A DNA stretch of 63,788 bases, counting the filler, from Octopus bimaculoides (lineage: Eukaryota): NCBI RefSeq assembly GCF_001194135.2. It is 10 parts of 8 records of this genome, joined end to end, with 100 filler letters (N's around TTAATTAATTAA, not from the genome) between each part and the next. Parts side by side here need not be neighbours in the genome. Positions count along the whole stretch, not along the records: positions 57,665 to 60,474 come from NC_068991.1; 9 more parts are not named here. One strand, 5' to 3'. Shown piece by piece: positions 7,190 to 60,474 of the stretch. Position 1 is the first letter of the stretch. Each line of letters starts with the position of its first letter. The position numbers were made by a program, and so were the translations under genes. Under the pieces are notes generated by a model. It worked only from the letters and a program-made list of their open reading frames with translations, did no database searches and was not told the DNA's origin.

Positions 7190-9945
7190 TACAATGTGAC
7201 ATGTACACAATCGAATGGCAAAAAAGGGGCCTTCCACATACTCATATCCTGCTTTGGCTCTCAACGAAGATCAAATCAACTGACATCGACATCATAATCT
7301 CTGCAGAACTTCCTGATGCACCTTTAGACAAAGTACTATACGACATACTTAAAGCAAACATGGTCCATGTGGACATGGATTCAACATTAACTCACCATGT
7401 TTGAAAGACAGCGTATGTTCAAAAAAGTTTCCAAGGAAGTTCCTACAACAAACTCAGACAGGTGCTGATGGGTATCCATCATACAGACAGAGAAAACCAC
7501 AAGACGGCGGTTTCACAGCAACTATCGGACAGCACGAGGTTGATATTTTCAATGCCCACATTAACGTTGACTTTTGCAACTCCATTAAGTATGTTTGCAA
7601 GGGCTCTGATGCTGCAATGTTTGCACTTCAACAATACTGCCAGGATGAGGTGACGCACTATCAGGTGGGACACTACATAAGTAGCAACTAGGCTTTCTGG
7701 CACATCATTGGCTTTCCACTTCACCACCGACACCCCGCCATTCAACAGCTTCCAGTGCACCTGGAAAACGGTCAAAGAGTGTACTTCACTGATGCTAATG
7801 CTTCTCTGTTGGCAGAGCAACCAAGGGATAGCACACCCACTGCATTCTTCAAGCTCTGTCAAGTGGATCCATTCGCTCAAACCTTACTGTATCCACAGAT
7901 TCCATCGTACTACACTTGGAATGGAAAACAATGAACCCCAAGGAAAGCAGGTCAAAATATTCATGGATACCCTGGCATTAACTTTGACACTTGCCTTGGC
8001 CGAGTATACACAGTACATCCCACTCGACGAGAGTGCTTCTACCTCCGCCTACTACTGCATGAGGTCAGAGGCCCCACGTGTTTCCAGGCCCTAAAAACCG
8101 TTCATGGACATGTCTGCACAACATACAGAGAAGCCTGCTATCGACAAAGACTGTTAGAAGATGGTGCACAATGGGATGCAACTTTGGGAGAGGCTGCTTT
8201 ATCACAATCACCTAAAAGTTTCAGGGCACTATTTGCAGTATTACTACAGACATGCGAACTATGTGATCCTGCAACTCTATGGCTCAAGTACAGGGACAAA
8301 CTGGCTGAAGACTTTCAGCGGCAAGCTCAACAGCTCTATCCTGACATGGAAGGTATTAGCAATGAAGTCTACAAAACTCTCTGTAACATTGAAGACAATT
8401 GCCACACTGGGTGGTAATGAATTGTCCACATATGGCCTACCACAAACATTCAGGTCAGGGTCAAATAGCCTTCCCACTGCTGTCATTTATGAAACATCTT
8501 ACAACACTCAAGCGCTTTCAAAGTACATTGCTGAAAACGAGCATAAATTACTTCGGACCAGCTGCAGGCCTACACACCTATTAACAGTGTACGCCAACGT
8601 GAGGGACGATTGTTCCTCCTTGATGCTCCTGGAGGGACAGGAAAACCATTTATAACAAAGCCTCTCCTTGCAGAAGTTAGGCAGCATCAGGTTATTGCAG
8701 TAGCAGTGGCTTACCCTGGGATTGCAGCTACTTTGTTACCTAGTGGCCAGGACAGCACACTCGACTTTCAAACTCCCTCTCAATTTAGCAGCATCCGACA
8801 TACTTACATGCAACATCACCAAAAGCTCAGATCAGGGGCAGGTACTTCAAAGGTATCATCTAATTGTCTGGGATGAATGCACCAAGAGAGCTTTGGAAGC
8901 ATTAGATAGAGCCCCAAAAGACATTCAAGACTGTTACGCTTCAGGTGATTTCAGGCAAACTCTTCCTGTCATTCCGAAAGGTACTAGANNNNNNNNNNGC
9001 CCCAAAAGACATTCAAGACTGTTACGCTTCAGGTGATTTCAGGCAAACTCTTCCTGTCATTCCGAAAGGTACTAGAGCAGATGAGGTCCAAGCATGCCTA
9101 AAGTCCTCTACCCTGTGGCATCATGTTACCATTCTCAGTCTTAACACTAACATGACAGCTCAGCTACATGGCGATCAAATGTCCAAAAAGTTTGCACAGG
9201 ACATTTTGACAATTGGTGATGGCAAGGTGCCCCTCAGCGCTGCACGAGAAATGGAAGTATGGCCATTTTGCTCTGTTGTTAATTCTGTAGATGACCTCAA
9301 ACACAAAGTCTTTCCCAACTTCAAAGAAAACCACCTAAATCACAATTGGCTGTGTGAAAAGAGCAATATTAGCTCCAAAAAACATAGCTGTTACAAAAAT
9401 TAATCAATAGCTGATGCATTCTCTTCCTGGCAATTTTCAAACTTACAAGTCTGTTGATATAGTTCCAGATACAAATGAAGTGGGGAACTATCCTCCTGAT
9501 TTTCTCAATTCGTTGGAGCCTCCTGGACTACCTCCTCACATATTATCGCTTAAAGTTGGAACGCCTGTTATGCTACTCCACAATCTGGAACCACCAAGAC
9601 TTTGCAATGGAACATGACTCGTGATAAAGATGATGACACACGTTATCGAGGCTATCATTCTTTCTGGATATGGAAAAGGTGATGTCTTTATTCCAAGAAT
9701 TCCTCTTACTCTATCAGGAGCAGACATTCCTTTTACATTCAGAAGACTTCAATTCTCCCTTCGTGTCACTTTTGCCATGTCCATTAACAAATCTCAGGGT
9801 TAAACCTTCTTTGTAGCTGGTCTTCTCTTGGAAGAGCCCTGCTTCTCACATGAACAACTGTATGTTGGCTGCTGAAGAGTGGGAAGCAAAACAAACCTAT
9901 TTGCATATGCTCCACAAGGAATATTGTTTACAATGAGGTGTCATA
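7190..9945 (+). mobile_element. Helitron Rep-Helicase (Rep plus Pif1-like helicase) remnant, frameshifted
   Basis: Rep motifs IEWQKRGLPHTHILLW and KYVCKG. Helicase motifs [56 protein letters not shown]. Many stops and frameshifts. Confidence 0.95.
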
Positions 9946-10057
9946 ATGACAACAGCAAGAAAGTATGTACATAATCACCTTCTTTTACCAAATTTCATTG
10001 ACTTTCATGTATTTATATTGATATACATATATGCATTTGGGTGTGTGTATATATATA

Positions 10058-11336: not shown

Positions 11337-12356
11337 TCAGTTTAAATAGAATAATTACATCTTAAATTGTTCCTAAGACAACTAATCCTTGCAAGTTGAG
11401 CAAGCCTTCAGGGTATAATAATAGTAAAGAGATCATATTCTTGAATGGAAAGGGGATAAACTGTTTACCTAACCAATTTTTTTTTTTTTGTGATAGTTCA
11501 ACAGGATACTATTTTAAAGGAAAACAACATTTTAAAGGTCATATGAAAACCAATTTTAAAAATATAAGAAAAATTCTTAATTTTACAATATGAAATAGGA
11601 ACACTGAAGTGGTCAAAGTGATATACTGAAGTAACCAGAAATTGTAAAACAAAATATCTTCATTAATTTTATAAACAAGGCACTAATAGCTAAAATTTAG
11701 CCTGTTTTAAAGTTACAAAACTGTATATTCTGTCAATAAACCTGATAAAACACATAGTTAAATGGCAAGAGAGAAAAACAGTTATAAGCTGTCAAGTGAC
11801 ATGAAGAAAATAATCATTTGAAGTCATAACCCTGCCAACCACAATGGAGACAAATCAATGCCACTGATGAAGCAGCAGGATTGTCCAATAAGAATTCAGT
11901 TTATAAAGAATTTACACCCCCACCCTCTACAAAACAACAAATAAATTTTAATTATTTTACACTAAGTTAAATTGCATTGAATTCTCTTAAGTGCACACTG
12001 AGAGTAAGGCACACTTCTATCATCTGAATATAAAATAATCTGTAATCTAATTTCAAAAGGAATGTGAATAATGAAAACATATACAGAACAAAAATGAAAT
12101 GTCTGATGTCAAATGATATATATAAACCACAAATCATAGCATAAAGAAAAAGAAGTTGTGGTTTAAAGTTAACATTTAGATCTTTTTTTTTTTTTTATGA
12201 CGAGACACATCAACTTGGGTATAAGACAATGGCAGTGATGGAGAGAAAAATAAATCTGAGCGAAATCACCTCTCTTCTATACATTCTACAAATAATGTTT
12301 CAAGTCATTTGTAAGAATTACTGGATGAATGTCCAATATAATTTTAATTTCTCCAC

Positions 12357-13509
12357 CTATTCATCATCCTCTTCCTCCTCTTCTTCTTCCTCCTCTTCTT
12401 CATCACCTTCACCCTCTTCCTCGGCTTCCTCTTCATCATCATCAGCCTCTTCATCATCTTCATCCTCCTCCTCTTCCTCCTCAACCTTTGCTTTCTTGAC
12501 TGAAGAAGCACCTTTAATTTGTTCACCACTTTTCTATAAGCAACAATAAATAAATAAAGCTTAAACTCATGTTTTCTCATCAAAAATCATCTTTCAATAC
12601 AAATTTTTTTTTGTTTTTAGCTAAAGACAATCAAGTTAACATTACCTTTTTGTATTCAGCAATTGCTACATCATACTTCTTTTTTTCTTCTCGATTTCTT
12701 TTTTCATATGGTTTCTTAACTTCATCTGTCATCTTTCTCCACTCCTCTCCAGCTAAAATAAACATGTAATATATATTTCAAAAACTAGATGCATAATGGA
12801 TAATGCTTTAGTTTATCACAATCATAGAATTACAAAGAAATTTCAAATAAAAAATGAAAATATTACAAACCTAATCTGAGTATCTCTTTGTGATCAATAC
12901 CCTTCCCATTCATTTTCAATCTGAAGTCATTTAAGAACAGGAAATATGAAGATTGTGGTCTTTTTGGTTTATTTGGATCACCTGAATTTTTCTGTTTATA
13001 ATCTGACATCTATAGATATGAAAATATAAAACAGTAAAGATATAGACCTCTACAATACATTTACCCTACTTTTTACACACACTGACTTTCATTAGATATG
13101 CTTAGTGTATGTTACCTCTTTAACGTATCTGGCTTTATCCTTGGCAGCTTTCTCCTCAAAGGGCTTTTTCTGTACAACAGTTAGAGCCTTCCATTTTTCT
13201 GAGCATTCTTTGGTAAAATCTGAAACCTAACAATATAACTTATTACAATACAAGAAAAATTCAATACCACATTCCAAACAAGCCTAATCAATAACTGCAC
13301 CAGTTCAACTCACATTTTAAGAGGCTTAAATTAAAGCAAAGCATATTATAGTATCCAACTTACTTTAGGAATGGTTTTGCCTGATTTAGCAGCCTGCTCT
13401 CTGCAATGTGCCATATAATAGAAGTAAGCAGATGTAGTTCGTTTGGGCCTATTAACATCCTTCGGCTTCTTTCTTTTACGGCCTTTGGTTGCAGCTGCAG
13501 GGAGACGAC
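12357..13509 (-). CDS. HMGB: HMGB-family protein (two HMG boxes, acidic C-terminal tail); five well-supported coding exons
   Basis: Exons 13509-13364 (RLPAAATKGRKRKKPKDVNRPKRTTSAYFYY...TIPK), 13226-13116 (VSDFTKECSEKWKAL...ARYVKE), 13009-12871 (MSDYKQKNSGDPNKPKRPQSSYFLFLNDFR...ILRL), 12752-12646 (AGEEWRKMTDEVKKPYE...AEYKK), 12533-12357 (KSGEQIKG...poly-D/E, TAG). All introns GT-AG with matching phases 0, 0, 1, 0. Family call only; exact orthologue not determined. Confidence 0.95.
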
Positions 13510-57215: not shown

Positions 57216-57694
57216 TGTAGATGGGGGGAGAGTTATAAAATTGTAAAATAAAACTAAGCTCAATAAACAAACAAAAACTGCAAAATAGAGATGACAAACA
57301 ATTGTAAGAGATTAAAAAAAAAAAATATAGCCTTCCCAGCAGCCCTCTGTCCCCTGTCTAGCTAAAATAAAAAGAAAAAAAAATTGATATTTATTTTGAC
57401 GATGACAACAAAAATAGTTGATGACAAATTATAAAAGTATACGCTTACAAATTGAATTAAAACTTTGGAGAACTTTTATCCAATATTGTTTTTAATTTAC
57501 ACATAATTTTGTAATACACAGAAAACGTTGCTGTTTAAGAGAAAGAGAAATAGGAGAGAATGGGNNNNNNNNNNNNNNNNNNNNNNNNNNNNNNNNNNNN
57601 NNNNNNNNTTAATTAATTAANNNNNNNNNNNNNNNNNNNNNNNNNNNNNNNNNNNNNNNNNNNNATATATATCCATATATAAACACATACACAC

Positions 57695-57758
<64 letters not shown>

Positions 57759-58280
57759 CTCTCTCTCTATATATATATATATATGTATATGCACATATAC
57801 ACATATATATTCATTTTCTCTATCTATTTATTTATTTTTGGTGGTGTGTTGGGAGTATATTATAATGTAGGGGTCGGTAACTAAGAATTCTCATATACAC
57901 TTAGACACATAGACATGTTTGTATACATTTTTATTGTTCATCCAAAATGGGCAATTTACGCATGGAGCTCATTAGTAGTAGTTAATATTACAAAGTTCAA
58001 TCCAGACATTATAACGTGTATCTCTGTATCTAAATATTTAATCCTTAGTATGCACATTGAAGCATGAATGTAGTAAAAGTTGCTCTGCGATCACTTTGAC
58101 ACCTGACATGCGGTGTAGAGTGCACCTGTTCAGACAACGTTGATTGAACATATGTGTGACATGAACATTTGATCAATATAAACAAATCATTTGTACAAGT
58201 CATTTGGCAAAAGCTGAACGCTCATATGTTATCTTTGATAGGAGTGTCCATCATGTGTGTGTGTATTTATTAATGAATGT

Positions 58281-58560
58281 ATATGGCTCAGTGATTAGAG
58301 GGCCAGTCTTACAATTGTGAGGTTGTGAGTTCAATTCCTGGACTTGATTGTGTTCTTGAGCAAGACACTTTATTTCACATTGCTCCAGTTCACTGCAGAA
58401 ATGAGTTTTGATGTCACTGGTACCAAGCTGCATCGGATTTTTACCTATTCCTTGAACAACATTGGGGGTATTTAAAGGCAAACAACTTTGCCTGGACTTG
58501 TGTCTTGGAGGGGAACTTTCTGGGTGCATTCCCATGGTCATTCGCGACTGAATGGACTCC
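58281..58560 (+). mobile_element. tRNA-derived CORE-like SINE, second family
   Basis: A box TGGCTCAGTGA, B box GAGTTCAATTCC, CORE-like TTCTTGAGCAAGACACTT, and CCCATGGTCATTCGCGACTGAA tail (tail also seen at 46861-46900). Confidence 0.8.
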
Positions 58561-58580
58561 TGACCAGAAATATATATACT

Positions 58581-58830
58581 TTTTTATTAAGGCTGCAAAA
58601 ACATCACAAAAAACTGTGACTCAGAGTTTCACATTCCTGTTCCTTGGACAGTTGTGATCAAGACTACTTGAAATTTGAGAACATGAAACTCTGAGTCACA
58701 GTTTTTGTGATGTTTTTGCAGCTTTAATAAAAATGCATATTACTCTAACTTCACTATTCGAGTACTATCTTTTCCACATTGTTTTGCTTTTATGTGCTTA
58801 CTCGTGTAATATATAATACCTGTACATCAC
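58581..58830. repeat. Inverted pair of Penelope-like terminal repeats with hammerhead motifs
   Basis: ~52-bp inverted arms at 58581-58634 and 58681-58733. Minus strand 58651-58614 folds as a minimal type I hammerhead. Confidence 0.65.
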
Positions 58831-59316
58831 CTCCAAACCTTCTAATATATACATANNNNNNNNNNAAGAATGATAATAACAGAATCAATGATACAGGCGA
58901 CAGCAGGCCAAAAAAATAGCATTAAATAGCGGAGGGATTAAAATTAATCAAAGGACATATTAAGTATGTCTACCTGCTTGAAATAACAGTCAAATCTCAG
59001 TATTAAATCGGCAAAAATACACTGGTGATAACTACAGAGATCAAACGAAGGTAAATTTGGTTAAGACAATCTACTTACATACATTTAAGTATTTGGATTC
59101 ACATGGACTAGTTTCTGCATTGGCAAAATAAGCCTTAGCTTCTTCAGCATGCATTACCAAGATAAGAGATTCCCAACCTATCCTTCTGAAGTCTATGCCG
59201 CTACTGATTCATTTTGAGCCAAAACCACAGCAGCTTACCAGTGTAAAATAATCTCTAATAACGAGATTTGACTGTTATTTCAATCAGGTAGACATACTTA
59301 GTATGTTCTTTGATTA

Positions 59317-59698
59317 ATAACTATTAATTTCCAGTACCGCTGCCGTAGTCTCCTTTAGAGAGACTTAGAAATATTAATAACTCTATTTCTGAAAACCAGT
59401 GGATAGATTCCACTGAAATTAGATAAATAACCTTCGAGCAGATAGTCAGCAGCGCCGCCTGGCTAAGGCTTGGCTGCTCTGCATTGACAAGGGGCAACAC
59501 CCTGAAACTAGTCTGCAGATGCCAAACCAGCAGGGGGACACTGCTGACCTCCCCTGTTCGAAGGTTATAAAGGACACAGGTTTCGTGTGTCACATAGCTA
59601 GCTAGAGGCGATGGCTTCTTGGAGCTAATTCACGGCAGCTTTCGTCCTAATTTTGGGACTGCCATGTTGGCTTGGCGATAACTATTAATTTCCAGTAC
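59317..59698 (+). mobile_element. 340-bp structured insertion with a 21-bp target-site duplication; candidate retrozyme
   Basis: ATAACTATTAATTTCCAGTAC occurs at 59317-59337 and 59678-59698. The insert is GC-rich, non-coding and densely self-complementary. Confidence 0.75.
59470..59525 (+). ncRNA. Minimal type I hammerhead ribozyme with core transitions
   Basis: Stem I TCTGCA/TGCAGA, core TTGACAA (consensus CTGANGA), stem II GGGG-CAACA-CCCT, GAAA, palindromic stem III ACTAGT, GTC cleavage triplet ending 59513, outer TTGGC/GCCAA helix. Confidence 0.75.
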
Positions 59699-60268
59699 AA
59701 CATCCCCTCATGACATAAAAATGCTAGAAGCTAGGCTGAAAAAAGAAGATGAATGACATCGTCTTCTAATACCGAAGGATTGCCTATATATCTTGTACTT
59801 GTTTCAATCATTAGACTCTGGGCATGCTGGGGCAAAAGAAAAATGATTAGCTTATGAACTTCATTAGCTTACAACTGTTTCTTTTATAGGGTGTGGTGGA
59901 CTCATAGTTGAGTGCCTGAGTAATGCCTTACAGTTTCATTAGAGGCATACGTATATTGATACAAATAATATGTGAGTATATGCATATATGCGTACATGTA
60001 TGTACATACCTACATCTACATGTATATATCGATGCATATTTTGGGTACAGGATGTCACAAAAAACGTGGTCAAAATGAAAAACAGAACATAAACAAAGCA
60101 CGGAAAACAAACTTTTTTTCGGACAACGGTAGGAACACACAGGAAAACAGACAGGCCACATAGGGAACATTTCCTTCATCAGTTGCCCCTATTCTAAACT
60201 AAGTGTTTCGAAGATATTGAGTTCTACACCAGATCATTAGTATCGCAATACCTAAACGATTTATATAT

Positions 60269-60474
60269 ATCATCATCATCATCATCATCGTCGTTTAACG
60301 TCCGCTTTCCATGCTAGCATGGGTTGGACGATTTGACTGAGGACTGGTGAAACCAGATGGCTACACCAGGCTCCAATCTGATTTGGCAGAGTTTCTGCAG
60401 CTGGATGCCCTTCCTAACGCCAACCACTCCGAGAGTGTAGTGGGTGCTTTTACGTGCCACCGGCACGAAGGCCA
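60269..60474 (-). mobile_element. SINE with an RTE-like 3' tail and (GAT)n end
   Basis: Minus strand ends CCAACCCATGCTAGCATGGAAAGCGGACGTTAAACGACGATGATG. Cut by the scaffold join. Confidence 0.7.

What the first reader, a model, noticed from the sequence alone, without database searches (positions are those of the whole stretch)
59317..59698. Candidate retrozyme: 340-bp hammerhead-bearing structured RNA inserted with a 21-bp target-site duplication
Seen: a perfect 21-bp AT-rich direct repeat brackets a non-coding, GC-rich insert with no poly(A) and no real TIRs. The insert has a type I hammerhead at 59478-59519. It is nested in long helices: GTCAGCAG 59445-59452 with CTGCTGAC 59541-59548, and a 15-bp helix 59427-59441 with 59554-59568 (one G-U). 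Other hairpins are 59347/59365, 59367/59390, 59397/59415 and 59573/59591. Established: small non-LTR retrozymes with type I hammerheads, a few hundred nt long, occur in metazoans including a bivalve and yield circular RNAs; a palindromic stem III (ACTAGT here) is typical of minimal hammerheads that act as dimers. Inference: this is a unit-length copy of such an RNA, mobilised in trans, possibly by Penelope-like enzymes. The core changes (C3>T, G8>A, C11.1>T) suggest this copy is dead, but the family consensus may be active. I do not know of a description of this family in cephalopods, but could not search.
Basis: partly seen in the sequence, partly recalled or inferred. Interest (0 to 1): 0.85.

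Follow-up and report, generated by a model that had tools for sequence, protein, structure and literature searches.

The report
Solo hammerhead-ribozyme retroelement insertion
A 340-bp non-coding insertion with a perfect 21-bp target duplication carries a genuine animal-type hammerhead self-cleaving ribozyme, so it is most likely one stranded copy of a "retrozyme"-class mobile RNA element: a known kind, apparently not yet described in cephalopods.

Summary
A perfect 21-bp direct repeat (59317-59337 and 59678-59698) brackets a 340-bp non-coding block. That block folds far better than shuffles (z about -9; neighbouring blocks -1.8 to +0.7). Its central rod is tipped by a type I hammerhead at 59478-59519. 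Rfam reports no hammerhead. However, covariance models built only from four experimentally validated retrozyme hammerheads score it 28.0 bits, and 45.8 bits once helix Ib and loop 1 are included. Background maxima are about 10 bits. Helix sizes (6 bp, 4 bp, 1 bp plus a palindromic tetraloop) and loop 1 (UGC/U) match axolotl HHR_Amex1. U3-A8 is a published natural covariation, a non-Watson-Crick 10.1-11.1 pair occurs in an active axolotl ribozyme, and the intact duplication argues against decay. My best reading is a recent, solitary, complete copy of a small hammerhead-bearing non-autonomous retroelement, inserted by target-primed reverse transcription (confidence 0.55). The main rival is a 5'-truncated Penelope-like element end (0.2). 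The locus is a monomer, so the tandem criterion for a retrozyme is not met. Copy number, circular RNA and cleavage could not be tested because no cephalopod data were reachable. It is a new member of a known kind, of moderate interest.

The parts
59317..59337 (.). Left copy of the 21-bp direct repeat (target-site duplication). It begins 1 nt inside the TTAA that ends the upstream inverted-repeat element.
   Evidence: perfect copy, only two in the window, 0 expected. Adding it to the insert changes the circular fold by only -1.4 kcal/mol, so it behaves as flank and not as part of the structured RNA.
59338..59677 (+). The inserted element: 340 nt, non-coding, a compact branched RNA fold that fills the insert from its 2nd to its second-to-last base.
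   Evidence: z about -9, controls -1.8 to +0.7; no real ORF; no known RNA family, no tRNA.
59339..59346 (+). 5' strand of the 8-bp closing helix (GCUGCCGU). It pairs with 59632-59639 (ACGGCAGC) and encloses the whole multibranch domain.
   Evidence: It argues that the 5' end is a natural structural boundary and not a random truncation point.
59632..59639 (+). 3' strand of the closing helix.
59427..59568 (+). Central 142-nt rod: a 15-bp helix, an 8-bp helix and several shorter helices, with the hammerhead at its tip.
59470..59525 (+). Extended hammerhead: helix Ib (UUGGC/GCCAA), loop 1 (5' UGC / 3' U), then the ribozyme proper.
   Evidence: Model R2, built from axolotl Ax330, Ax353 and coral retrozyme hammerheads: 45.8 bits, E 7e-13, next best 10.6 bits in about 94 kb. 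The same dot-bracket architecture fits this sequence and Ax330.
59478..59519 (+). Type I hammerhead core. Helix I is 6 bp (UCUGCA/UGCAGA). Box UUGACAA carries the U3-A8 variant. Helix II is 4 bp (GGGG/CCCU, with G10.1-U11.1) and has loop CAACA. Then GAAA, helix III (A-U closing the palindromic CUAG), U16.1 and C17.
   Evidence: Model R1, built from four validated retrozyme hammerheads: 28.0 bits, E 2.4e-7, next best 9.3; background maximum 10.6 bits in 52 kb.
59513..59514 (+). Predicted self-cleavage site, after C17 (GUC|UGCAGA). It lies 176 nt into the insert and 164 nt from its 3' end.
   Evidence: Position follows from the hammerhead alignment. Cleavage itself was not tested.
59678..59698 (.). 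Right copy of the 21-bp target-site duplication.

Best explanation
The 340-bp block is a recently integrated, solitary and probably complete copy of a small non-coding retroelement. It belongs to the canonical type I hammerhead class, the class that makes up animal non-LTR retrozymes.

Shown:
- It is an insertion bounded by a perfect 21-bp duplication of AT-rich target DNA.
- Its plus-strand RNA would fold into a compact branched structure.
- The central rod ends in a hammerhead with the standard animal architecture. That means helix Ib, loop 1 (UGC/U), a 6-bp helix I, a 4-bp helix II with a 5-nt loop, and a 1-bp helix III closed by a palindromic tetraloop.

Inferred:
- The element was copied from RNA into a staggered chromosomal break, with nicks 21 bp apart, by target-primed reverse transcription supplied in trans. 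A Penelope-like element enzyme is the most likely source, because these elements are abundant and recently active in Octopus.
- The predicted cleavage site lies in the middle of the insert. The template was therefore not a self-cleaved linear monomer but a circularised or longer-than-unit RNA.
- The core differences from the textbook hammerhead (U3-A8, G10.1-U11.1) are inherited family features, not decay.
- Helix III is too weak for a single motif. Cleavage after C59513 would need two motifs pairing through ACUAGU (a double hammerhead).
- In the monomer the ribozyme is masked by the rod. The catalytic fold scores -4.1 kcal/mol, against -12.7 for the alternative fold of the 42-mer.
- With only one ribozyme, this locus cannot release a circular RNA by itself. 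It is a dead-end offspring copy, not a master.
For: - The target duplication is perfect and unique.
- Structure is exceptional compared with shuffles and with neighbouring DNA.
- Hammerhead models built only from validated retrozyme ribozymes (sequences from the PMC7229834 supplement) score it 28.0 bits (R1) and 45.8 bits (R2). Background maxima are 10.6 bits.
- Neither model reported the genuine Penelope-type minimal hammerhead in the coral control locus L002. The match is therefore specific to the canonical, retrozyme-type ribozyme.
- Allowing the published cores (C3-G8 or U3-A8) and at most one other core mismatch, chance gives 2e-7 per position. That is 0.024 per 60.5-kb window and 1.4e-4 in the insert. 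Requiring canonical helix sizes as well gave 0 hits in 4e8 random positions.
- U3-A8 is a published natural covariation (PMC4209133). The helix sizes and palindromic loop 3 match the published description of animal type I hammerheads. Loop 1 and helix Ib match axolotl HHR_Amex1.
- Size (340 nt), GC below 50% and a duplication longer than 4 bp fit the published non-LTR retrozyme description. Dispersed monomer copies are described in preprint 10.64898/2026.07.22.740005.
- The first 9 nt form a perfect 8-bp closing helix with a distant segment. This favours a complete element over a random 5' truncation.
- Penelope-like elements make up 6.8% of the O. vulgaris genome and include 31 recently active families (PMC13282606). 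They integrate by target-primed reverse transcription with duplications of variable length (PMC8557442).
Against: - Rfam's curated hammerhead models give no hit, even at E<=10 on a 421-nt slice.
- Only one copy is visible and there is no tandem partner.
- No related sequence was found anywhere I could search. Those collections probably hold no cephalopod DNA, so this says little either way.
- The fold is almost equally good on both strands, with 4 versus 8 G-U pairs.
- The fold is much stronger than those of four validated retrozymes, which gave z -1.1 to -4.2. The extreme pairing is therefore not a retrozyme hallmark and may mean something else.
- Penelope-like elements are so abundant in Octopus that a truncated end of one has a high prior.
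- Activity of a hammerhead combining U3-A8 with G10.1-U11.1 is not demonstrated.
- The source organism was not verified with tools.
Confidence: 0.55

Rival explanations
1. It is a heavily 5'-truncated copy of an autonomous Penelope-like element. Only the last 340 nt of its 3' untranslated or pseudo-LTR region, which carries the element's hammerhead, was copied before reverse transcription stopped.
For: - These elements are frequently 5'-truncated, carry hammerheads in their pseudo-LTRs and make duplications of variable length (PMC8557442).
- They make up 6.8% of the O. vulgaris genome.
- In S. mansoni most hammerheads of this origin are single motifs, and the U3-A8 variant was found there.
- Coral control locus L002 shows a hammerhead about 170 nt after the ORF stop, and an inverted truncated copy of it.
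- A second hammerhead-like motif lies on the opposite strand 326 nt upstream. Opposite-strand pairs are reported for these elements.
Against: - There is no trace of RT or GIY-YIG coding sequence in the piece (tblastn with 120 coral PLE proteins, all E > 0.1). By my reading, all three plus-strand frames of the insert stop within 10 codons.
- The ribozyme has the canonical geometry that PMC7229834 assigns to retrozymes. It lacks the minimal geometry assigned to autonomous elements: a long helix II, a bulge after A9 and a short helix I.
- Models R1 and R2 do not detect the real coral PLE hammerhead.
- The insert's 5' end forms a perfect closing helix. That would be an unlikely coincidence for a random truncation point.
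Confidence: 0.2
2. The unit is 361 nt and the 21-mer belongs to the element. The locus would then be a slightly longer-than-unit cDNA of a circular RNA, made by rolling-circle reverse transcription and so terminally redundant, with no real target duplication. This is a variant of the main explanation.
For: - Rolling-circle copying is the proposed route to retrozyme tandem arrays.
- The cleavage site is internal, so a circular or multimeric template is needed in any case.
- A 9-mer of the repeat region (TTAATAACT) recurs inside the insert at 59374-59382 (by eye).
Against: - The 21-mer adds only -1.4 kcal/mol to the circular fold.
- It is 29% GC, like the flank.
- The left copy starts exactly at the TTAA boundary of the neighbouring inverted-repeat element. 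That would require insertion precisely at that junction with no duplication.
Confidence: 0.08
3. It is a SINE-like hammerhead retroposon mobilised by a LINE, comparable to the Schistosoma Sm-alpha family, and not by a Penelope-like enzyme.
For: - A 21-bp duplication is in the usual range for LINE-type target-primed reverse transcription (general knowledge).
- LINEs (12.9% of the genome) and SINEs (11.6%) are the most abundant transposable-element orders in O. vulgaris, and both include recently active families.
- Sm-alpha is about 335 bp with an active type I hammerhead (my knowledge, not checked here).
Against: - There is no tRNA-like or other pol III head.
- There is no A-rich or microsatellite 3' tail.
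- There is only a 6-of-9 match to a B box at 59556-66 (by eye).
Confidence: 0.07
4. The block is a hairpin-rich DNA segment whose structure matters, if at all, at the DNA level. Examples are a foldback or palindrome-rich fragment captured at a staggered break. On this reading the hammerhead is a relic with no role.
For: - The fold is nearly strand-symmetric.
- It is far stronger than in validated retrozymes.
- No expression data are available.
Against: - A 45.8-bit match to the full hammerhead architecture, including loop 1, cannot be a by-product of palindromes.
- There are no terminal inverted repeats.
- A 21-bp duplication does not fit any cut-and-paste transposon superfamily (general knowledge).
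Confidence: 0.05

Closest known systems
Animal non-LTR retrozymes, especially axolotl Rtz_331 with HHR_Amex1 (Cervera & de la Pena 2020, PMC7229834)
   Same: - Unit size (330-350 nt there, 340 nt here) and GC below or near 50%.
- A self-paired RNA with a type I hammerhead.
- Ribozyme layout: helix Ib of 5 bp, loop 1 of 5' UGC / 3' U, helix I of 6 bp, helix II of 4 bp and loop 2 starting CAA.
- Helix III: 1 bp plus a palindromic tetraloop (CAUG there, CUAG here).
- The ribozyme is expected to need a dimer for efficient cleavage.

   Different: - Here there is a single monomer with a clean 21-bp duplication and no tandem array.
- The core has U3-A8 and G10.1-U11.1 in place of C3-G8 and G-C.
- The RNA is much more base-paired (z -9.1 against -1.9 for Ax330).
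- There is no sequence homology outside the ribozyme.
- Copy number and circular RNA are unknown.
Hammerheads of Penelope-like elements (Cervera & de la Pena 2014, PMC4209133), including the U3-A8 variant of S. mansoni Cercyon
   Same: - The U3-A8 core covariation.
- A palindromic helix III.
- Mostly single dispersed motifs.
- Target-primed reverse transcription with duplications of variable length.
- Pairs of motifs on opposite strands.

   Different: - Typical metazoan minimal versions have a long helix II (7-8 bp), a short helix I (4-5 bp), an extra nucleotide after A9 and no loop-loop contacts. The coral control shows this.
- The window's ribozyme has the canonical geometry.
- No RT/EN coding remnant adjoins it.
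Mussel retrozyme Mg353 (the only mollusc retrozyme characterised; PMC7229834)
   Same: - A mollusc host.
- A 350-390 bp unit.
- A type I hammerhead with a 4-bp helix II and a palindromic helix III.

   Different: - The mussel ribozyme lacks most of the loop 1/loop 2 consensus and has a large loop 1.
- Its GC is 37% and its fold is weak (z -1.1).
- It is tandem and has about 5000 copies.
- It shows no sequence similarity to the window's element (30 of 69 aligned positions, mostly core).
Schistosoma Sm-alpha SINE-like hammerhead repeats (from my own knowledge; not checked with tools)
   Same: - A lophotrochozoan host.
- About 335 bp.
- A canonical type I hammerhead.
- Dispersed as well as tandem copies.
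   Different: Sm-alpha has a pol III promoter of tRNA type. None is detectable here.

Membership tests
Animal non-LTR retrozyme | Contains a bona fide type I hammerhead (conserved core, helices I-III) | tested here: met
   R1 28.0 bits and R2 45.8 bits against a background of 10.6 bits or less. The core carries U3-A8, a published covariation, and a G10.1-U11.1 wobble. Rfam's own models do not report it.
Animal non-LTR retrozyme | Loop 1 / loop 2 elements that support the tertiary contact of canonical type I hammerheads | tested here: inconclusive
   Loop 1 (UGC/U), helix Ib and loop 2 (CAACA against CAAAAA) mirror axolotl HHR_Amex1, which is said to keep all conserved contacts. Adding them raises the model score by 17.8 bits. 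The contact itself cannot be tested in silico here.
Animal non-LTR retrozyme | Arranged as head-to-tail tandem repeats (dimers to multimers), so that two ribozymes flank a unit | tested here: not met
   Only the 21-mer is repeated, and there is one hammerhead on the plus strand. At best the locus is a 'monomer derivative' as described in preprint 10.64898/2026.07.22.740005. I therefore do not file this locus as a functional retrozyme.
Animal non-LTR retrozyme | Monomer of about 150-450 bp, GC below about 50%, target duplication longer than 4 bp when present | tested here: met
   340 nt, 48.5% GC, 21-bp duplication.
Animal non-LTR retrozyme | [quoted passage not shown] | not testable with these tools
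   No cephalopod genome or transcriptome was reachable. All collection scans were empty, apart from one chance hit in the viral collection.
Penelope-like element (truncated copy or pseudo-LTR) | Continuity with, or remnants of, an RT + GIY-YIG ORF | tested here: not met
   tblastn of 120 PLE proteins against the piece: best E 0.18. By my reading, all three plus-strand frames of the insert stop within 10 codons.
Penelope-like element (truncated copy or pseudo-LTR) | Minimal hammerhead geometry (long helix II, short helix I, extra nucleotide after A9, no loop 3 or a tiny palindromic one) | tested here: not met
   The main ribozyme has canonical 6/4/1-bp helices and no bulge. The coral PLE control has the minimal geometry and is not detected by R1 or R2.
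Penelope-like element (truncated copy or pseudo-LTR) | Sequence identity of the 3' end with an autonomous element of the same genome | not testable with these tools
   No cephalopod PLE sequence could be obtained. My PLE query retrieved coral elements only.
Rfam Hammerhead_1 (RF00163) and other Rfam hammerhead families | Score at or above the family gathering threshold | tested here: not met
   No hammerhead family is listed at E<=10, either for the whole piece or for 59300-59720.
SINE (pol III retroposon) | tRNA-, 5S- or 7SL-derived head with internal promoter; LINE-like or A-rich tail | tested here: not met
   ARAGORN found nothing. Rfam found no small-RNA match. There is no tail.
MITE / cut-and-paste DNA transposon | Terminal inverted repeats and a short duplication of fixed length | tested here: not met
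   There is no inverted repeat between the insert's termini, and the duplication is 21 bp.

The most novel reading that the evidence does not exclude
This would be a footprint of a so far undescribed cephalopod retrozyme family. Its active ribozyme would combine the canonical loop-stabilised type I scaffold with a U3-A8 catalytic core. This solitary copy is circularly permuted relative to the cleavage site and bounded by a pristine 21-bp duplication. It would then record integration of exactly one turn of a circular RNA by target-primed reverse transcription, giving a direct genomic handle on how retrozyme circles re-enter DNA. The unusually rod-like, viroid-grade pairing (z about -9) would belong to the circular RNA's biology.
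Probability: 0.15. Interest if true: 0.7.

Novelty: new member of a known kind. Interest (0 to 1): 0.45.

Why it matters
Hammerhead-bearing retroelements (retrozymes and Penelope-like elements) are a recently recognised source of abundant small circular RNAs in animals. Their integration step is poorly documented, and no retrozyme analysis exists for cephalopods, whose genomes are rich in Penelope-like elements.

A young copy with intact boundaries gives three things:
- Exact insertion junctions to compare across copies.
- A natural test case for the U3-A8 core inside a canonical type I scaffold.
- A concrete query for finding the master tandem arrays and their circular RNAs in cephalopod data.

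If it turns out to be only a truncated Penelope-like element end, it is routine repeat annotation.

Tried and rejected
1. Rfam cmscan on the piece and on 59300-59720 at E<=10 found no hammerhead or any other credible family. The mir-297, mir-466 and mir-196 hits are AT/TG low-complexity sequence or inverted repeats.
2. I tried to fish for paralogues through the 89-aa minus-strand ORF. There were no hits, not even the ORF itself.
3. Exact and gapped pattern scans of the metagenome, prokaryote-genome and viral collections with ribozyme and rod sequences gave 0 hits. One viral hit lacked the helices and is chance.
4. I recalled a PLE RT-EN sequence to reach cephalopod PLEs. It retrieved only coral elements in the top 120 of 2011 hits, so no cephalopod PLE end could be compared. 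The coral locus served as a positive control instead.
5. I searched paper supplements for the ribozyme sequence or for Octopus PLE consensi. Nothing was found.
6. I tested whether the upstream inverted repeat runs into the 21-mer, which would have proved that the 21-mer is target DNA. It stops at 59318.
7. I looked for homology between the insert and the upstream element carrying the second hammerhead-like motif. There is none (z -1 to +2).
8. A conserved distance from hammerhead to 3' end as a PLE signature does not hold. The coral PLE has about 60 nt, against 163-164 nt here.
9. I checked for a pol III head and for bacterial-type promoter or terminator signals. None were found.
10. Counting the motif as a hammerhead with up to 3 mismatches gave a chance expectation of about 0.9 per window. 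That descriptor alone is therefore rejected as evidence.
Full report
**Scope and limits.** Only 57665-60474 is real sequence. The SINE-like repeats in the piece look octopus-like to me from memory, but no tool confirmed the organism. That covers copy number, consensus, empty sites and RNA-seq. What follows rests on the sequence itself, on controls I could build, and on the literature.

**1. The observation.** The 21-mer ATAACTATTAATTTCCAGTAC occurs exactly twice, at 59317-59337 and 59678-59698. No further copy appears at up to 3 mismatches, and none appeared in 100 shuffles.

The 340 nt between the copies have these properties:
- GC is 48.5%, against 37.5% for the piece.
- There is no poly(A) and there are no terminal inverted repeats.
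- ARAGORN finds no tRNA-like part.
- The only ORFs are spurious. The longest is 89 aa on the minus strand and has no homologue among 5.8 billion proteins.

The block folds exceptionally well:
- The plus strand gives -147.9 kcal/mol with z -8.97. The minus strand gives -140.6 with z -8.39.
- Seven neighbouring 340-nt blocks give z between -1.8 and +0.7.
In addition, an 8-bp closing helix at 59339-46/59632-39 makes the structured domain fill the insert almost base for base.

**2. Is the hammerhead real?** The motif reads UCUGCA|UUGACAA|GGGG-CAACA-CCCU|GAAA|CUAG|UC|UGCAGA (59478-59519). It is the only hit of a permissive descriptor on either strand of the piece.

Two results argue for caution:
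- Rfam lists no hammerhead family at E<=10, even when only 421 nt are searched.
- A hammerhead with up to three core mismatches is common in random sequence. I measured 7e-6 per position, which is about 0.9 per 60.5-kb window on both strands and 0.005 in the insert.

Three further lines settle it in favour.

(a) The literature accounts for the mismatches:
- Cervera & de la Pena 2014 report a natural U3-A8 covariation of the C3-G8 core pair in S. mansoni Cercyon PLE hammerheads, with about 1300 genomic hits (PMC4209133).
- The same paper defines the canonical animal type I ribozyme. It has a helix I of 6 bp, a helix II of 4 bp, and a helix III of 1-2 bp capped by a 2-4 nt palindromic loop. This is exactly what is seen here.
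- The self-cleaving axolotl HHR_Amex2 has a U-U pair at 10.1-11.1. A G-U wobble there is therefore not disqualifying.

(b) I repeated the simulation allowing C3-G8 or U3-A8 and at most one other core mismatch:
- Random sequence gives 2e-7 per position. That is 0.024 per window and 1.4e-4 in the insert.
- Requiring the canonical helix sizes as well gave no hit in 4e8 positions.

(c) I ran an independent model test:
- The supplement of PMC7229834 prints four validated retrozyme sequences: coral Amil224, mussel Mg353 and axolotl Ax353 and Ax330.
- Model R1, built from their four hammerheads alone, scores the candidate 28.0 bits (E 2.4e-7). The next best hit in the piece is 9.3 bits.
- In 52 kb of unrelated DNA the maximum is 10.6 bits.
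- Model R2 extends the model outward to helix Ib and loop 1, using axolotl x2 and coral. It scores 59470-59525 at 45.8 bits (E 7e-13), against a maximum of 10.6 bits elsewhere.
- One dot-bracket string describes both the candidate and axolotl Ax330. It comprises a 5-bp helix Ib, loop 1 of 5' UGC / 3' U, a 6-bp helix I, a 4-bp helix II with loop CAACA or CAAAAA, and A-[palindromic tetraloop]-U. HHR_Amex1 is described as keeping all conserved loop 1/loop 2 contacts.

I conclude that this is a genuine canonical type I hammerhead.

**3.
- Two of the three 'changes' are a compensatory pair known in nature, and the third keeps pairing.
- The 42 bases of the duplication are identical and the helices are nearly perfect. 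If three random hits had landed in the 56 positions made up of the core and the duplication, all three would fall in the 14 core positions only about 1.6% of the time (my arithmetic). Forming a compensated pair by chance is less likely still.
- The differences are therefore most simply inherited from the source element.

What limits activity is architecture:
- Helix III is a single A-U pair around CUAG. Ribozymes of this type cleave poorly as monomers (6% in an hour for Rtz_331) and work as double hammerheads.
- In the 42-mer the catalytic fold scores -4.1 kcal/mol. An alternative fold that extends helix I through the core scores -12.7. The ribozyme is thus masked in the monomer.

**4. What is the element?** A 21-bp duplication without terminal inverted repeats points to target-primed reverse transcription. 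It does not point to a cut-and-paste transposon.

Retrozyme criteria met: size, GC below 50%, a long duplication, a self-paired RNA and a canonical type I hammerhead all match the published description of animal non-LTR retrozymes.

Retrozyme criterion not met: the defining tandem arrangement is absent, because this is one unit with one ribozyme. A 2026 preprint describes dispersed monomer derivatives of retrozyme families and argues that retrozymes derive from PLE pseudo-LTRs.

The predicted cleavage site (59513|59514) lies 176 nt into the insert. The template cannot have been a self-cleaved linear monomer. A circle or a longer transcript is implied (inference).

The main rival is a 5'-truncated PLE end. 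In its favour:
- PLEs make up 6.8% of the O. vulgaris genome.
- 31 families are recently active.
- They are mostly truncated on insertion.

Against it:
- There is no RT/GIY-YIG remnant.
- The plus-strand frames are closed from the first codons.
- The ribozyme geometry is the canonical one that PMC7229834 ties to retrozymes, not the minimal one tied to autonomous elements.
- My models ignore the true minimal hammerhead of a coral PLE, which I located 170 nt after its ORF together with an inverted copy upstream.
- The insert's very first bases form a perfect long-range helix. That would be an unlikely coincidence for a random truncation point.

I give the complete small non-autonomous element 0.55 and the truncated PLE 0.2.

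Whether the 21-mer is target DNA or terminal redundancy of a 361-nt circle cannot be proved here. Three points favour a true duplication:
- The 21-mer adds almost nothing to the fold.
- It is AT-rich like the flank.
- It begins at the TTAA edge of the neighbouring element.

**5. Oddities.**
- The fold is much stronger than in the four validated retrozymes, which gave circular-fold z values of -1.1 to -4.2 against -9.1 here.
- The fold is almost strand-symmetric. The extreme pairing is therefore not explained by membership in the class.
- A second hammerhead-like motif lies on the minus strand at 59101-59152, inside the inverted-repeat element 58943-59318. It has exact CUGAAGA and GAAACUAGUC boxes, the same helix III and a 6-bp helix I. 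Its helix II is irregular and it scores only at noise level with R1 and R2.
- The second motif's cleavage site is 163 nt from that element's end, against 164 nt in the insert. Yet the two elements share no other sequence. I leave this open.

**6. Comparison and novelty.** The closest known systems are:
- The axolotl Rtz_331/HHR_Amex1 retrozyme, for ribozyme architecture.
- PLE hammerheads, for the U3-A8 core and the integration mode.
- The mussel retrozyme, for host phylum.

I found no paper describing retrozymes in cephalopods. The giant squid genome paper lists 235 Rfam Hammerhead_1 loci without analysing them.

The finding is a new member of a known kind. Its interest is moderate. It would rise if genome-wide data show tandem masters and circular RNAs. 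It would fall to routine if the block is just a PLE tail.

Noticed in passing
window 59101-59152, minus strand: A second hammerhead-like motif: AUGCAUG|CUGAAGA|A-GC...GC-A|GAAA|CUAG|UC|CAUGU. The conserved boxes are exact and helix III (ACUAGU) is the same as in the main ribozyme. Helix II is irregular, and the motif scores at noise level with the covariance models (9.3 and 8.2 bits). Its cleavage site is 163 nt from the end of its host element, against 164 nt in the main insert.
   Followed up: partly
window 58943-59318: A 376-bp element with 63-nt terminal inverted repeats (92% complementary), bounded by TTAA on both sides. Its fold z is -12.95 because of the arms, while the 250-nt centre is unremarkable (z -1.75). 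It could be a TTAA-type MITE. It could also be a Penelope-style head-to-head pair made of a 313-bp minus-strand copy and a 63-bp inverted copy. It hosts the second hammerhead-like motif, and the main insert landed right at its edge.
   Followed up: partly
window 58574-58740: A foldback element with nested inverted repeats of 39 nt and 28 nt (92-93% complementary). It is the source of the spurious mir-196, SodC-thermometer and snoZ185 Rfam hits.
   Followed up: no
window 58283-58560: A tRNA-derived SINE-like head, seen by eye: tggctcagtgattagag ... gagttcaattcctgg resemble A and B boxes. ARAGORN does not call it a tRNA.
   Followed up: no
window 60268-60474: An (ATC)n microsatellite followed by a repeat that I recall as a common Octopus SINE (gtttaacgtccgctttccatgctagcatgggttggacg...). 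It runs off the end of the piece. This is my only clue to the organism and it is not verified.
   Followed up: no
window 57694-57785 and 59958-60042: (TATC)n, (TC)n and (TA)n microsatellites and TG/TA-rich low-complexity sequence. These give the sub-threshold mir-297, mir-466 and mir-1277 Rfam hits.
   Followed up: no
window 58856-58865: A run of 10 N (an assembly gap) lies 78 nt left of the inverted-repeat element. The left context of that element is therefore uncertain.
   Followed up: no
L002 9311-12649 (Porites lutea contig, coral PLE control): A textbook Penelope-like arrangement. A 608-bp inverted 5'-truncated copy (9345-9952) is 100% identical to the 3' end of the main copy (12042-12649). 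Minimal hammerheads lie at 9400-9444 (minus strand) and 12550-12594 (plus strand). A further 49-nt inverted repeat at 9311-9359/9955-10003 may be the 'tail' extension.
   Followed up: partly
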